A program made the position numbers and the translations under genes. Below are positions 56,139-61,454 of a stretch of 64,000 nucleotides of DNA, piece by piece. Under the pieces are notes generated by a model. The model did not search any database. It worked only from the letters and a program-made list of their open reading frames with translations, and was not told the origin of the DNA. Source of the stretch: Klebsormidium nitens (Eukaryota > Plantae > Klebsormidiophyceae); contig DF236997.1 in assembly GCA_000708835.1 (NCBI GenBank), forward strand, positions 124,001 through 188,000, read 5' to 3'. The number at the start of each line of letters is the position of its first letter. The first letter of the stretch is position 1.

Positions 56139-59100
56139 ATGGCGGACCACCTGAAGCTCAAGGACAACCCGGCAACTCTCAAGCTGCTGAGTTCCTTCAG
56201 TGAGAATCCTTCTTCGTTGTTCTGTCAAGAATTTGATGCCGTCTTGCAGTGGTCACCTCTTCCTCACGTGGAAGCCTCTTGAATCCTGTGAAGCATCTTT
56301 TTCACTGGTCGATAATGCAATCAACAAACTAGAGCATCAGACCACCGGCAGGAAGCTTTTGCAGCATACAAGCCCCGACTTTCTTTGGCTTTAGTTTCTT
56401 GAATCAAATTGGTCGCTATTACATTTATACACGTTACCAATTAGCTGGATTTGAAGAAACCCTTCAAGAAGGGAACAGTATGCGGTCACGTTGTGCCTTG
56501 GTACATGCATTTGAAGTTTACTGAAAGGATAATGATGGAAACACAAGGGTTTTGTAGTTGTAGTCTCTTCTTTCCAATCAGCGCCCTTCTCTCCTCCTCA
56601 AGTGAACAGCCGCCAACTTATAAAAGCCCACATTCCTGGACGTCCTCAGAATACTCAGAATCGTGCCAACTCAGACTAGCACCTTGCTTAGCATCTGACT
56701 ATACCCTCATTTGAAGTCGTTCCTCAGACTTCGCCATTCTGCTCCTTCCCTCAGGCGCTGGGAACGAGGTGCTGGTGTTCAGTGGGTACGTGGACAAGAT
56801 CAACGCGTACGGGAAGAGCCAGAAGCGCGTGCTCATCATCACGGACCGCGGGCTGTACAACGTGGACAACTCCAAGTGCAAGCGCCGCATCGACCTCCAG
56901 TCCATCGCCAAGATCGTGCGCAGCGCCACGGGGTACCAGTTTGTGCTCAACGTGCCCGAGGTGGGCGGTGAAAGGGTTCAGATCGGAAAGGGGCTTGCTG
57001 GACGGGTCTATAAATTCAGACATGAGAAATGGTTGACCAGATCTGCCAATTCGCGTTTGCTTTCTGGCAAGTTTCTGGAAGTTCTATGCAGCATAAGAGT
57101 TGATCGATCTCCGTGTCAGGGGAAATCTCGTTAATGCTCCGTTGGATAAACAACTCTGTCGCCAACGTGGCTCTTTGTATCGGATATGGCACTTTTCCTA
57201 AGTAAATCCTAATCTGACTAAAGTTTTCTGTGTGTCAGGAGTATGATTACCTGTACGAGAGCTCCCACATGGCCGACATCTGTCAGATCATTGCGACCAA
57301 CTACCAGGTCCAGGGCGGGCAGCCCCTGGAAGTCAAGGTGGTGGTGAGTCTGCGCCCATGTTTGCAGCCGTCGATCTTATACTTTGCTGACACGAACTCT
57401 GTTAATTACGGCGCTTTGATTTAGGAAAAGCTGCCCATTTTGAGAGCTCAATCCCTTTGCTTGCCTTCTCAGGATCATAAGTAAGACTTCAACAGGAGGA
57501 TTCTGCTTTGAAACCAAAGCGAATACGAAGAAGAAGAAGAAGTTCGATGCAAAAAGGAACGGAAGCGAGCGATATCCGAGGGCTTCAGTCCTCTACCCTT
57601 TTGTTGGCAGGACGCCAAGGACCTGAAGCCGTACGTGATGACCAAGAAGGAGGCCAAGAAGATGAACAAGGACATCGAGAGCCTGCGCTCCAGCATGGCC
57701 GCCATGAACACCAAGGGCGGCGAGATCGACCGCGCGCGCACCAACACCGTGAGACAGCGGTGTCCTGGATCTCGAGTTGGTCGCCTCGTTAATCTCAACT
57801 GCGGATTTTTGTGAAGACGTCAGAAGGTGCTTGTCCTCGAGCAGTTCTGGAGCTGAGGCCGCTGGCAATCAGCCGCACCCGTGCCCCTTTTGCTGATCCG
57901 TCGGATCGAAAAATGCCCACCAAAACCAACAATTGATGAAGGGAGTACTTTCTCGAGCTCGATACAAACGACCTTTCCCTGGAGGACATCGTACCAACGT
58001 AAAGCGTACAGATTCGAGCCGTTCAACTTGCTCTGGCCAGAGTTCCTTCTGCTAGAGTCTGTCATGTGTACAGGGGTCCTGTCGCTGGTTGATTGCAGGT
58101 GACCCACTTCTCCGAGAACAAGGAGCAGGTCGAGCTGGAGGACTTTGACCTCCTGCGGGTGCTGGGCAAGGGCAGCTTCGGAAAGGTCAGCCGCCAAGCC
58201 CCGGAAGTGACCAGTCTCTTTTACATTGGAAGTGTATCGTTTCGGAGGTCGGGCCAGCTGACAACGAAGATCGAAAGGCTCTCCGCTCCCACGTTAAGAG
58301 GCAGGTTGCAGTGCGGTCCGCTCTTTCATTTCCAGCACAGTTCAAAAAATCGAATGGTCAGACCGAAAGGTAATTGCCCACAAAAGATCGATGAAATCTC
58401 GAGGCATCGTTGCTACTTCTGACGATTTGAAAGCAGTCCCTACGCGTTGCATGATCAAATTCAAAGCTTCGTTGCGTCTTCGGTCTTTGAGTGACTGTTC
58501 CCGTGCGTGGGCGCAGGTGATGCTGGTGCGGTACCGCAAGAACGGCGCGGTGTACGCGATGAAGGTGCTCAAGAAGGACAGCGTTATCCAGCGAAAGCAG
58601 CTCGAGCACACCATGACCGAGCGCCAGATCCTCCAGGTCAGCGTCGGAAACGAAAAGGAACGGCCACTTAACACGGAAGCACGCACTTGGCAACAGTTGA
58701 TCGTTCTGGGCGACTTTGCCTGAGGCTCAGAAGGGAAAGAGCAAACCTATGAAAGAGCGATAGAAGCTGCTTGTACCAGTCGACGGATGATCCCCTCTCC
58801 GTGAGCAAGCGACCCCGCCAGGTCGCGGCTTCGATGCTCATTCTGCGCCATCAAGATATCAGATGGTGACTACAGATATCCTTACTAGCTCTCTGCAAGA
58901 CCTCGATAAGGGGTCTTTATGTGAAAAGCCATCTCAACACCTTCGGGTAGTCGGTCAACCCTTTTCTCCTCCCCCGCGTTTCCAGGCGGTGCAGCACCCG
59001 TTTTTGGTGGGGCTGCGGTACGCGTTCCAGACGGAGGCCAAGCTGTACCTGGTGCTGGACTACCTGAACGGCGGGGAGCTGTTCTTCCACCTCAAGCAGG

Positions 59101-61454
59101 CCAAGCGCTTCTCGGAGGACCGCGCGCGCTTCTACACGTGCGAGATCCTGCTCGCCGTGGGGCACCTCCACTCGCTCGGCATCGTCTACAGGTGCGCGCG
59201 CAGATCAGTCAGCCGAGCAGTGACTCACCTCACTTTTCGAAGTATGGAAGTCCTAAACGGTTTTTATGAATCTTCTCATTCCGAAGAGCCCACAAGGGCG
59301 CGCGCGAAGCAAGGCTTGCTTGCTTCAAACATCGTAGGCGTTACCTTTTGCGTCTCCATTATAGCGCTCCAAGCTCGGCTTCGGACGACAATGAAAGACG
59401 TTACAAAAAGCGAATTGTGCGTGCAGAGACATGAAGCCGGAGAACCTGTTGCTGGACGCTCAGGGCCACATCCACGTGTCCGATTTTGGGCTGGCCAAGC
59501 AGGACATCACCGACAACTCGTCGGCCAAGACCTTCTGCGGGACGCCCGAGTACCTGGGTCAGTCTCGGTCAATTCTGTTCTGTGTAACCTTTTGACGTTG
59601 GTACACAGATCCGCCTGCCTCCAAACATCTGTTGCGTTCCATTATCGGCAGACATGCTTTCTTTCAAACTCCCTCATACCAACGGTGTCAAGCATATCGT
59701 TGTTAAGTTCCAACTACTTTTCAGGCGTCGGACTGCATATCAGACGAAGAAACTGAAAACACCTAATAATAATCGCAGAGATTTTTCCTGGCAGCAAGCT
59801 CTTGAACGTCTTCAAAGGAGTGGCAAGTGTTCTATTCGGTCGCGCAAATACACCGCGACTGAAAACTGAAAGGCTCTCCCCTTCTCCACCTGCAGCCCCT
59901 GAGGTGCTGAGTGGCAAGGGCCATGGGCGTGCCGTCGACTGGTGGTCTTTGGGGACGCTTCTCTTCGAGATGCTCGCGGGCCTGGTAAGGGCCTCAGACT
60001 GGGCAGAAGATTCCCTCAAAAATCCTGATACGAATGCAATTTCGGATCATCACGAACTTCGATAACCGAAGCTGATTTGCAGAATGGTATACATGGTTCG
60101 GGTCCACAAGAGTTCAGATACAAGAGAGAAAGTATCAGAGGGGCAACTCCTGAACACGTTTTGACCACTCTCCGTCATGTTGGAGCAGCATGTTTCACAC
60201 GAAGTACGCTTCGTCATCGATTTTAGCTGCAAAAGCATGGGTGTATACGTATTTTGAGCAGAGCTTCGCGGCTTTCAGCACGAAAGATGTTTTAGCTAGC
60301 GTGCTTTTGACCAAATAATTGTTACTGTCCGCAGCCTCCATTCTATGACCGCAACGTGAGCAACATGTACAAGAAGATTCTCAACGACAAGCTCGTCTTT
60401 CCCCCCCACTTCTCAGCGACCGCCCAGGACCTGCTCGCCCGGGTAAGCGACTTCACCTATTTCTTTTCCTGCCTTCTTCTAATAAGGATGATGCTAGCCC
60501 ACTACCGTGAGCAATACTCAAGAGATGTCCAAATTTGCGAGTTGCTTACTATCCCAAGACCTCTTCGAGAATTATGTATTTACTTGATCTGAGATTAATG
60601 TTTTTTCGGAGATTATGCTGTGATGCAAAAATGGAACGTGCTGGCGGGCTCAGCAGACGAAACAGGTTTTTGCTTCCCGTCCGGGGAAGCCGCAAGTGAC
60701 ACGCTCGCTAGGCAAACGTGGGGCCTGCTTCTGAAGCAACTTTGTTAATCAGACAACGAAATAAAAGTTTCTCCAAGCGGTTTACGCGCCAGTCAAAGAA
60801 TAGCGCGTTCCGTTCCGTTTGCAGTTGTTGGAGCGGAACCCGGAGCGGCGGCTGGGCAGTAGCCCCAAGGACGCGGAGGAGATCAAGGCGCACGCGTTCT
60901 TCAAGGACGTCAAGTGGGACGACGTGCTCAACAAGAGGATCCCCGTGCCCTTCGTGCCCACCGTCAGGGTGAGGGTTCTTAATTAAAGAATCTGATAACA
61001 AAGATAAGAAATAAGGCGGTTTTCGGTGTCTTTGGGCGGTTTGCAAGGTCGTGCTGCTCCAGCCGAAGCTCTTGCCTGGCGATGTTTGGTCTTAAAGATG
61101 CTATTTGCTTGCCACTGTTTGAAGGTACTTGCAGCGTACAAAATCGCTCACTCTCACGAGGTGAATGTAGTGTACAAACATTGCGACAGCTCCTCTAGAG
61201 CCCTCTTCTTGACAAAGGTTGTCAAGAGGCTCGAAGTCAAAAGCTCTCCCTCTGCACTTCAGAAAGAACAAGATGAGCCGAGAACGAAAGACGCGTCGAA
61301 CTTTTCGCAGAGCGCGGAGGACGTGGGCAACTTCGACAAGACGTTCACCGAGGAGGTGGTTCGCGACACCATGGCGGAGCCACTTAGCAACGGGCCCAAG
61401 GAGGGCAACCTCTTCGACGGCTTCACCTTCGTGCAGGAAAGCAAGCTCAAGTAG
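56139..61454 (+). CDS. AGC Ser/Thr kinase (Akt/SGK/S6K type) with N-terminal myosin-I TH1 (PH-like) domain, 12 exons, ~512 aa (possibly ~585 aa with upstream exon)
   Basis: Exons 56139-56199, 56755-56960, 57239-57343, 57611-57748, 58099-58185, 58517-58636, 58986-59191, 59427-59557, 59896-59984, 60335-60442, 60825-60968, 61311-61454 (1539 nt, phases consistent). N-domain: [33 protein letters not shown]...KRRIDLQSI.....S....FVLNVPEEYDYLY. Kinase: [49 protein letters not shown]. Confidence 0.93.

What the first reader, a model, noticed from the sequence alone, without database searches (positions are those of the whole stretch)
56139..61454. Akt/SGK-like kinase fused to a class-I-myosin TH1 lipid-binding domain: candidate undescribed lipid-kinase signalling module
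Seen: the N-terminal ~130 aa ([29 protein letters not shown]...KRRIDLQSI...FVLNVPEEYDYLY) has the pattern of the myosin-I TH1 PH-like domain, including the basic K-x(n)-K-R loop. It is spliced in phase to a complete AGC kinase with the PDK1 activation-loop site (KTFCGTPEY), a turn-motif region (NFDKTFT) and a phosphorylatable hydrophobic motif (FDGFTF, 61413-61430). Established: TH1 binds anionic phospholipids/PIP2; green plants have no class I myosin and no PH-domain Akt, and their S6Ks lack a lipid-binding module. Inference: a membrane-recruited Akt analogue built from a different PH-fold module, implying a phosphoinositide-PDK1-TOR-type branch absent from flowering plants. I cannot tell whether this architecture is already catalogued in protists.
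Basis: partly seen in the sequence, partly recalled or inferred. Interest (0 to 1): 0.8.

Follow-up and report, generated by a model that had tools for sequence, protein, structure and literature searches.

The report
Algal kinase with myosin-type lipid-binding head
This green-alga gene really does encode an Akt/SGK/S6K-type signalling kinase whose front end is the membrane-lipid-binding TH1 domain otherwise known from class I myosins; the design is unstudied in the papers searched but is already common in public protein databases for green algae, ciliates and other protists.

Summary
A 12-exon, all GT-AG gene on the + strand (56139-61454) encodes a 512-aa protein. Residues 1 to about 130 are a Myosin_TH1 domain: exon 2 alone scores above Pfam's cut-off. 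A flexible linker follows, then a complete AGC kinase with an Akt-type activation loop (T343), a turn-motif threonine (T485) and a hydrophobic motif FDGFTF (T504).

A related alga's contig keeps all 12 exons in order, with 30 synonymous against 4 non-synonymous codon changes. Full-length relatives (45-58% identical over most of the length) occur in Cymbomonas, Pterosperma, Chloropicon, Chlorokybus and Palpitomonas, several as single-ORF transcripts.

The modelled N-domain of the Chlorokybus orthologue is a PH fold, closest to the myosin-1c tail. The two residues needed for myosin-1c PIP2 binding are conserved (K35, R45).

No paper describing it was found, but Pfam already marks TH1+kinase in public records, and ESM Atlas holds clusters of it, one with 5,834 members, mostly ciliates.

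Lipid binding, PDK1/TOR control and the "Akt analogue" role are inferred, not shown. No RNA run covered this locus. Whether the gene is distinct from the alga's S6K was not resolved. The verdict is a real, moderately interesting new variant of a known kind.

The parts
56139..61454 (+). Whole coding region of the TH1-AGC kinase gene: 12 exons, 512 aa, stop codon TAG at 61452-61454.
   Evidence: Gene model from the sequence. It aligns end to end (56% identity) with the 516-aa orthologue P0114. All 12 exons are colinear in the related contig L001.
56139..57343 (+). Exons 1-3 (56139-56199, 56755-56960, 57239-57343), residues 1-124: the Myosin_TH1 / PH-like domain.
   Evidence: Pfam PF06017 on exon 2, E 2.5e-10. 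Orthologues hit the profile over positions 11-165 at E 1e-17 to 1e-22. The AF2 model of the orthologue domain has pLDDT 95.7, and its best PDB match is the myosin-1c tail 4R8G.
56796..56828 (+). Codons of K35 (56796-56798) and R45 (56826-56828): the basic beta1-loop-beta2 signature presumed to bind phosphoinositide.
   Evidence: They align to the myosin-1c K and R of VVK...PRPR (alignment). I identify these as K892 and R903 from my own count of myosin-1c numbering, because one search gives chain positions only. K892A and R903A abolish PIP2 binding (PMC3771945). Both residues are nearly invariant in 31 TH1-kinase N-domain rows.
57611..58143 (+). Exon 4 and the start of exon 5, residues 125-185: the end of the TH1 match followed by a charged flexible linker.
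   Evidence: TH1 profile matches in orthologues run to about residue 150. In the full-length AF2 model of P0114, residues 152-179 have pLDDT below 50.
58144..60905 (+). Protein kinase catalytic domain, residues 186-444, exons 5-11. It carries GKGSFGKV 193-200, AMK 213-215, YRDMKPEN 307-314, DFG 327-329 and APE 352-354.
   Evidence: Pfam Pkinase on exons 6-9; motif positions.
59530..59532 (+). Codon of T343, the activation-loop (PDK1-type) site in [13 protein letters not shown].
   Evidence: Read from the sequence. The T is nearly invariant in the 22 TH1-kinases of alignment A2.
60906..61451 (+). AGC C-terminal tail, residues 445-512. It carries FDKTFT 473-478, the turn-motif-equivalent T485 (61368-61370) and the hydrophobic motif FDGFTF 500-505 with T504 (61425-61427).
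   Evidence: Pfam Pkinase_C on exon 12, E 1.9e-9; motif positions; the family consensus FDGFTF in A2.

Best explanation
The locus is one gene for a 512-aa protein. It has an N-terminal TH1 domain (the PH-fold lipid-binding module of class I myosin tails, here with no motor), a disordered linker of about 30-50 residues, and a catalytically complete AGC kinase of the Akt/SGK/S6K group.

Most likely mechanism (inferred). The TH1 domain holds the kinase on acidic-phospholipid or PI(4,5)P2-rich membrane through K35, R45 and the KCKRR loop. There the activation loop (T343) is phosphorylated by PDK1. The tail sites (T485, T504) are phosphorylated by TOR or another hydrophobic-motif kinase. Membrane lipid state would then gate kinase output, as PH does for Akt, PX for SGK3 and C2 for Sch9.

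Shown here: the gene structure, both domains, conservation of the lipid-binding signature and phospho-acceptor residues, and purifying selection. The gene also belongs to a widespread TH1-AGC kinase family, in green algae of both chlorophyte and streptophyte branches and in Palpitomonas. TH1+kinase clusters are also large in ciliates, though they were not checked for the AGC tail.

Inferred: lipid binding, the identity of the upstream kinases, and the biological role.
For: Gene model and motifs. Pfam gives TH1 above the gathering score on exon 2 alone, plus Pkinase and Pkinase_C.

A second species' contig, L001, keeps all 12 exons with conserved AG/GT, diverged introns, and 30 synonymous against 4 non-synonymous codon differences.

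Full-length orthologues are 45-58% identical, some over N-truncated entries. Those scanned or precomputed carry TH1+Pkinase, and all but the truncated P0169 also Pkinase_C. They include transcriptome ORFs marked complete for Pterosperma and another MMETSP alga.

The N-domain AF2 model has pLDDT 95.7, seven strands and a C-terminal helix. Its top PDB match by Foldseek is the myosin-1c tail, TM 0.74, E 8e-7, followed by PH domains.

K35 and R45 align with myosin-1c K892 and R903 (residue numbers by my own count). They are nearly invariant in the family. Mutating them in myosin-1c abolishes PIP2 binding (PMC3771945).

The orthologue's kinase domain is closest to solved S6K1 (376 bits), Akt2 (358) and SGK1 (343).

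Close relatives of the kinase carry other lipid modules: PH in Gefionella, C2 in Ancyromonas and Fabomonas.
Against: No RNA from this organism covers the locus, so a single transcript is supported only by orthologues and exon phases.

Lipid binding was not measured. The second basic residue of the classic K-Xn-(K/R)-X-R signature is Q43 here.

The full-length AF2 model gives pTM 0.62 with a disordered linker, so it neither supports nor excludes Akt-like autoinhibitory docking.

The green lineage reportedly lacks TORC2 (PMC9664231, PMC4143559). By general knowledge it also lacks class I PI3K. The regulation therefore cannot be a copy of Akt's.
Confidence: 0.6

Rival explanations
1. It is simply the alga's ribosomal S6 kinase (the TORC1 effector) with an extra N-terminal domain. 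It would then act in translation control and not as an Akt/SGK-like membrane kinase.
For: The best solved match of the orthologue's kinase domain is human S6K1, at 376 bits against 358 for Akt2. The hydrophobic motif F-D-G-F-T-F-V and the D-T/S turn-motif spacing resemble S6K1's (comparison from general knowledge). TORC2 is reported missing in the green lineage, so TORC1 is the obvious motif kinase (PMC9664231, PMC4143559).
Against: The activation loop [13 protein letters not shown] is the Akt/SGK form, not the S6K form (general knowledge). In the kinase tree the animal S6K and MSK sequences form their own starred group outside the green-algal TH1 clade. Constraining all TH1-kinases to one clade is not rejected (p-AU 0.79). 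The Ostreococcus kinome paper describes S6K with a serine activation-loop site and makes no mention of a myosin or TH1 domain. No plant or algal S6K sequence was available to me, so this rival is not excluded.
Confidence: 0.2
2. The TH1 domain is not a lipid anchor here. It would serve as a protein-binding or purely autoinhibitory PH-fold module, as many PH-like domains do (the CARMIL and Sec3 PH domains are the next-best structural matches).
For: Foldseek matches to the CARMIL and Sec3 PH-like domains score almost as well as myosin-1c. The basic signature is only partly canonical, with Q43 in place of K/R.
Against: K35 and R45, the exact equivalents of the PIP2-binding residues of myosin-1c, are nearly invariant, as are R64-R65 of the basic KCKRR loop. 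Related kinases carry bona fide lipid modules (PH, C2) at the same position.
Confidence: 0.15
3. It is a gene-model artefact: two adjacent genes, a small TH1 protein and a kinase, wrongly joined.
For: No RNA evidence exists for this locus in the runs available.
Against: All exon phases fit with canonical splice sites and no stop. The same 12 exons lie in the same order in a second species. Single ORFs of about 500-560 aa with both domains occur in independent transcriptomes and annotated genomes. The model aligns end to end with them, linker included.
Confidence: 0.03

Closest known systems
Akt/PKB (PH domain + AGC kinase)
   Same: An N-terminal PH-fold lipid-binding module, a flexible linker and an AGC kinase. 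The activation-loop sequence [13 protein letters not shown] is identical (general knowledge). The hydrophobic motif has a phospho-acceptor. The orthologue's kinase domain scores 358 bits against Akt2.
   Different: The module is Myosin_TH1 (PF06017), not a classical PH domain. The PH_3 profile scores only 15.8 bits, below its cut-off. By analogy with myosin-1c the expected ligand is PI(4,5)P2 or acidic lipid, not PIP3. TORC2 is reported absent from the green lineage. Orthology to Akt is not shown.
SGK3 (PX + kinase) and yeast Sch9 (C2 + kinase); protist SGK-like kinases with PH or C2
   Same: The same kinase group with interchangeable N-terminal membrane-targeting modules. Gefionella (PH) and Ancyromonas and Fabomonas (C2) kinases are 51-57% identical to the window's kinase domain.
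   Different: The targeting module differs. In the tree the TH1 forms are separate from the PH and C2 forms.
Class I myosin tail TH1 domain (for example myosin-1c, PDB 4R8G)
   Same: Pfam family membership above the cut-off. The fold is the same (TM 0.74). The K892/R903-equivalent residues are conserved.
   Different: There is no motor, IQ or SH3 domain. The domain sits at the N-terminus of a kinase. The last 20 or so positions of the 185-position profile are not matched.
Database-only TH1-kinase entries (Cymbomonas tetramitiformis KAK3245901.1 / UniRef100_A0AAE0EYX8; Chloropicon primus 'protein kinase'; Chlorokybus Chrsp49S00481; ESM Atlas TH1+Pkinase clusters)
   Same: The same three-domain architecture and length. 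They are 46-56% identical end to end and fall in the same clade in the kinase tree.
   Different: They carry only automatic names (non-specific serine/threonine protein kinase, hypothetical protein). No functional description was found in the papers searched.
p70 S6 kinase
   Same: It is the best-scoring solved kinase domain (376 bits), with a similar hydrophobic-motif and turn-motif layout.
   Different: S6Ks have no lipid-binding domain. The activation loop here is the Akt/SGK type. The animal S6K/MSK group lies apart in the tree.

Membership tests
Myosin_TH1 domain (Pfam PF06017) | Sequence match above Pfam's gathering score | tested here: met
   Exon 2 alone scores 40.7 bits against a cut-off of 31.1, E 2.5e-10, profile positions 36-102. 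Full-length orthologues score 45-81 bits over profile positions about 11-165.
Myosin_TH1 domain (Pfam PF06017) | PH-like beta-sandwich capped by a C-terminal helix, as in the myosin-1c tail | tested here: met
   The AF2 model of the Chlorokybus orthologue's residues 1-132 (56% identical to window exon 2) has pLDDT 95.7. Its best PDB match is 4R8G_E, TM 0.74, E 8e-7. The test was done on an orthologue, not on the window protein itself.
Myosin_TH1 domain (Pfam PF06017) | Basic residues required for phosphoinositide binding (myosin-1c K892, R903) | tested here: met
   K35 and R45 align to these residues (the K892/R903 numbers are my own count on that alignment). They are nearly invariant in the family. 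Their role in myosin-1c comes from PMC3771945.
Myosin_TH1 domain (Pfam PF06017) | Actual binding of acidic phospholipids | not testable with these tools
   This needs liposome or lipid-overlay assays.
Class I myosin | Myosin motor domain upstream of TH1 | tested here: not met
   The protein starts at the TH1 domain. An in-frame stop lies 84 nt upstream of the ATG. Orthologues have no Myosin_head match.
AGC protein kinase | Pkinase domain followed by the Pkinase_C tail, with intact catalytic motifs | tested here: met
   Pfam matches on exons 6-9 and 12. [17 protein letters not shown] and APE are all present.
AGC protein kinase | Activation-loop Thr, turn-motif acceptor and hydrophobic motif F-x-x-F-S/T-F/Y | tested here: met
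   T343, T485 and FDGFTF with T504. They are conserved in alignment A2. Phosphorylation itself was not tested.
Akt/PKB proper | Classical N-terminal PH domain (PF00169) | tested here: not met
   No PF00169 match was found. Only PH_3 appears, at 15.8 bits and below its cut-off of 25. The module is TH1.
Akt/PKB proper | Orthology of the kinase domain to Akt | tested here: inconclusive
   Scores against S6K1, Akt2 and SGK1 are nearly equal. My tree held no Akt row: the one Akt-like hit, P0179, failed the length filter.
p70 S6 kinase orthologue | Kinase domain grouping with S6K, and the only such gene in the genome | tested here: inconclusive
   The animal S6K/MSK group lies outside the TH1 clade. 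No plant or algal S6K and no whole-genome search were available.
TH1-AGC kinase family (database-only) | TH1 + Pkinase + Pkinase_C in one ORF of about 500-560 aa, with the kinase domain in the same clade | tested here: met
   Identity of 45-56% to P0114, P0173, P0168, P0167, P0013 and P0187 over nearly the full length. The green-algal TH1 clade has SH-aLRT 96. One clade for all the TH1-kinases in the tree (Chlorokybus, Palpitomonas and the non-AGC forms were not in it) is not rejected (p-AU 0.79).

The most novel reading that the evidence does not exclude
Green algae of both branches, including a streptophyte alga close to the land-plant lineage, retain an ancient eukaryotic TH1-AGC kinase. 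It would be the green lineage's working equivalent of Akt/SGK: recruited by PI(4,5)P2 rather than PIP3, activated by PDK1 and TOR without TORC2, and lost on the way to flowering plants. This would qualify the textbook statement that PKB-type kinases are absent across the green lineage, and it would give a direct handle on lipid-to-growth signalling before land plants.
Probability: 0.3. Interest if true: 0.65.

Novelty: new variant of a known kind. Interest (0 to 1): 0.45.

Why it matters
Reviews of plant and algal TOR/AGC signalling read here state that only S6K survives in the green lineage and that PKB and TORC2 are missing (PMC4143559, PMC9664231). A conserved kinase of the same group carrying a PH-fold lipid module, in chlorophyte and streptophyte algae alike, suggests a lipid-gated AGC branch that those inventories do not mention. 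It also shows that the TH1 domain has a life outside myosins in a lineage with no class I myosin. The hypothesis is cheap to test with lipid binding, localisation and phospho-site response to TOR inhibitors. Its weight is limited because the architecture is already visible in public databases for thousands of protist proteins.

Tried and rejected
- **Word-based homologue searches.** Restricting the query to the TH1 region of P0114 and P0013 found only 4 and 1 proteins. This was too insensitive to map the distribution or to retrieve the window's own annotated protein.
- **ESM Atlas feature search.** With the kinase part as query it returned only generic AGC/PKA-named clusters, so it gave no subfamily assignment.
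- **RNA evidence.** No listed run holds the stretch. Laying four runs put one 49-base contig end upstream of the gene and nothing on it.
- **Full-length AF2.** I looked for Akt-like PH-in docking. The model gave pTM 0.62 with a disordered linker, so the result is uninformative.
- **Paper searches.** Searches for TH1 plus kinase, PF06017, Myosin_TH1 and kinome/ciliate terms found no description of the architecture. The library lacks most subscription journals.
- **Spliced protein not submitted.** I did not type the 512-aa product into any tool. Family, structure and PDB tests therefore used single exons by reference, or orthologues.
- **Rejected readings.** A myosin gene with upstream motor exons is rejected, because an in-frame stop precedes the ATG and orthologues start at TH1. 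Chance resemblance to TH1 is rejected by the Pfam scores and the fold match.

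
Full report
**What is there.** Reading 55500-62000 and assembling the GC-rich segments gives a 12-exon gene on the + strand, 56139-61454. Every intron is GT-AG, all phases fit and there is no internal stop. Exons are 56-66% GC and introns 45-53% GC. 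The product is 512 aa. The ATG at 56139 sits in an ACCATGG context, with an in-frame TAG 84 nt upstream, so no motor or other domain is hidden upstream in that exon. FDGFTF is residues 500-505, which is 61413-61430.

**Domains.** Pfam on single exons, given by reference, shows the following.
- Exon 2 (68 aa) matches Myosin_TH1 PF06017 at E 2.5e-10, 40.7 bits, above the curated cut-off of 31.1, over profile positions 36-102.
- Classical PH (PH_3) scores only 15.8 bits, below its cut-off.
- Exons 6-9 match Pkinase, and exon 12 matches Pkinase_C (E 1.9e-9).
- The only PDB sequence match of exon 2 is the myosin-1c tail 4R8G (E 1.4, weak), aligned over the PH core.
- The catalytic motifs are intact: GKGSFGKV 193-200, AMK 213-215, YRDMKPEN 307-314, DFG 327-329 and APE 352-354.
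- The activation loop is [13 protein letters not shown] with T343. The tail carries FDKTFT, a turn-motif-equivalent T485 (D-T at the spacing of the family's conserved D-S) and the hydrophobic motif with T504.

**Is the fusion real?** Three lines of evidence say yes.
- *Purifying selection in a second species.* A 91-aa gene call nearly identical to exon 2 (P0001) led to a 7.8-kb contig of a related alga, L001. All 12 exons are colinear there. Exons are 86-99% identical while introns are 74-78% identical or unalignable, and AG/GT are kept. Over 336 codons there are 30 synonymous against 4 non-synonymous differences, and 27 of 35 base changes fall at third positions.
- *Orthologues with both domains.* An exhaustive HMMER search with exon 2 found 292 representatives at E<=1e-3. 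At least 32 of the top 150 carry an AGC-like kinase C-terminal to the TH1 match.
- *End-to-end alignment.* The model aligns with P0114 (516 aa, 56%), P0173 (539 aa, 56%), P0168 (523 aa, 54%), P0013 (524 aa, 46.5%) and P0187 (563 aa, 45%).

These orthologues belong to:
- Cymbomonas tetramitiformis (KAK3245901.1, the same 90% cluster as P0114);
- an MMETSP alga;
- Chloropicon primus;
- Chlorokybus atmophyticus;
- Palpitomonas bilix, with Pterosperma as a further case.

The MMETSP entries for Pterosperma and the second alga are transcriptome ORFs marked complete, and P0173 is an uninterrupted ORF on a 3.5-kb contig. The fusion is therefore transcribed as one message in relatives. For this window itself no RNA run holds the stretch, and laying four runs gave nothing on the gene.

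**The N-domain.**
- *Pfam.* Full-length orthologues hit Myosin_TH1 at E 1e-17 to 1e-22 over profile positions about 11-165 of 185.
- *Family motifs.* An alignment of 31 N-domain rows (A1) shows a sharply conserved pattern: E-x-V-x-F-S, K-I-N, Q-x-R-V-L-x-I-T, Y-N, K-C-K-R-R-I and E-Y-D-Y.
- *Fold.* AF2 on the Chlorokybus orthologue's residues 1-132 with this alignment gives pLDDT 95.7 and pTM 0.88, with seven strands and a C-terminal helix. Foldseek against the PDB ranks the myosin-1c tail first (4R8G_E, TM 0.74, E 8e-7), then the CARMIL, ARAP3, Sec3, TAPP1 and PDK1 PH domains.
- *Lipid-binding residues.* In the alignment, K35 and R45 pair with the K of VVK and the second R of PRPR of myosin-1c. 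By my own count of myosin-1c numbering these are K892 and R903, whose alanine mutants lose PIP2 binding and membrane targeting (PMC3771945). Both are nearly invariant in the family, as are R64, R65 and I66.

Lipid binding itself remains inferred.

**The kinase.** The orthologue's kinase region scores almost equally against solved S6K1 (376 bits), Akt2 (358), SGK1 (343) and MSK1 (331), and lower against PKA and PKC (about 315).
- *Relatives without TH1.* Many protist proteins of about 400 aa are 55-58% identical to the window's kinase part. Some carry PH (Gefionella) or C2 (Ancyromonas, Fabomonas) at the N-terminus.
- *Tree.* A 57-row maximum-likelihood tree of the kinase and tail places the window in a green-algal TH1 clade (SH-aLRT 96). 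The PH forms, the C2 forms and the animal S6K+MSK rows each sit in their own starred groups.
- *Single origin.* Other TH1-kinases sit near the midpoint root. Constraining all the TH1-kinases in the tree to one clade gives a better likelihood than the quick free tree and is not rejected (p-AU 0.79). A single ancient origin is therefore compatible with the data.
- *Gaps.* The tree held no Akt, SGK or plant S6K reference. The relation to the alga's own S6K is therefore open.
- *Domain docking.* The full-length AF2 model of P0114 shows two well-folded domains joined by a linker with pLDDT below 50 (residues 152-179) and pTM 0.62. This says nothing firm about docking.

**Is it catalogued?** Yes.
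- Pfam PF06017+PF00069+PF00433 is precomputed on Chloropicon primus ('protein kinase') and several unnamed relatives, and my own scan finds it in the Cymbomonas-cluster representative.
- A shape search of the ESM Atlas with the N-domain model returns TH1+Pkinase clusters of 53, 122, 162 and 5,834 members. The largest is mostly ciliates.
- TH1 is also joined to kinases that lack the AGC tail (P0123, P0148, P0136).
- Five paper searches found no description of TH1-kinases.
- The AGC and TOR papers read do not mention them. PMC4143559 states that PKB and PKC are absent across the green lineage. PMC9664231 states that TORC2 is not conserved in microalgae. PMC3942036 states that plants and several chlorophytes have only myosin VIII and XI. 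PMC3499706 lists no such kinase.

**Organism.** Earlier notes of this scan call the genome Klebsormidium nitens. I did not verify this. It fits the 52% GC, the intron structure and the green-algal affinities, and I use it only as a lead.

**Interpretation.** This is a real, intact, selectively maintained member of a widespread but unstudied family. The family joins an Akt/SGK/S6K-group AGC kinase to a myosin-type TH1 PH-fold module at the N-terminus. The most likely mechanism runs as follows.
1. The TH1 domain recruits the kinase to acidic-lipid or PI(4,5)P2 membranes.
2. PDK1 phosphorylates T343.
3. TOR or another kinase phosphorylates the tail sites T485 and T504.

Since the green lineage is reported to lack TORC2, and by general knowledge class I PI3K, this is an analogue of Akt in design, not a copy of the pathway.

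The main rival, that it is just this alga's S6K, is not excluded (about 0.2). I rate it as a new variant of a known kind, of moderate interest.

Noticed in passing
window 28751-32293, minus strand: Two long open exons (28751-30313, 520 aa; 31523-32293, 256 aa) match Pfam Strumpellin (WASH complex subunit 5) at E 4.6e-93 and 3.7e-59, covering profile positions 497-976 and 91-319. A WASH-complex gene in a green alga is worth a look, because by general knowledge flowering plants are thought to lack this complex.
   Followed up: partly
window 41579-42223, minus strand: A 214-aa ORF has a weak SIS (sugar isomerase) domain match at E 1.2e-6. It is probably an exon of a sugar-phosphate isomerase-type gene.
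   Followed up: no
proteins P0002 (1543 aa), P0014, P0003-P0010: Exon 2's best non-self hits include proteins with two to four tandem TH1 domains. P0002 is a myosin head followed by four TH1 copies (Pfam). Their organisms are unknown.
   Followed up: partly
proteins P0123, P0148, P0136: TH1 is also fused to protein kinases with no Pkinase_C tail, at only about 30% identity to the window protein. The TH1 module has therefore been combined with more than one kinase type. The large ESM Atlas cluster suggests ciliates.
   Followed up: partly
protein P0284 (UniRef100_A0A6A7G348, labelled Hirondellea gigas): A TH1-AGC kinase is filed under a deep-sea amphipod, yet it groups with unnamed TH1-kinases (Logan/ENA sequences of unknown origin) in the tree. 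It is likely a contaminant from a protist in the animal's transcriptome.
   Followed up: no
window 53792-54302 versus L001 1-515: A second block upstream of the gene is conserved at 78% between the window and the related alga's contig. It is presumably part of the neighbouring gene. The region 53800-53999 is 70% GC.
   Followed up: no
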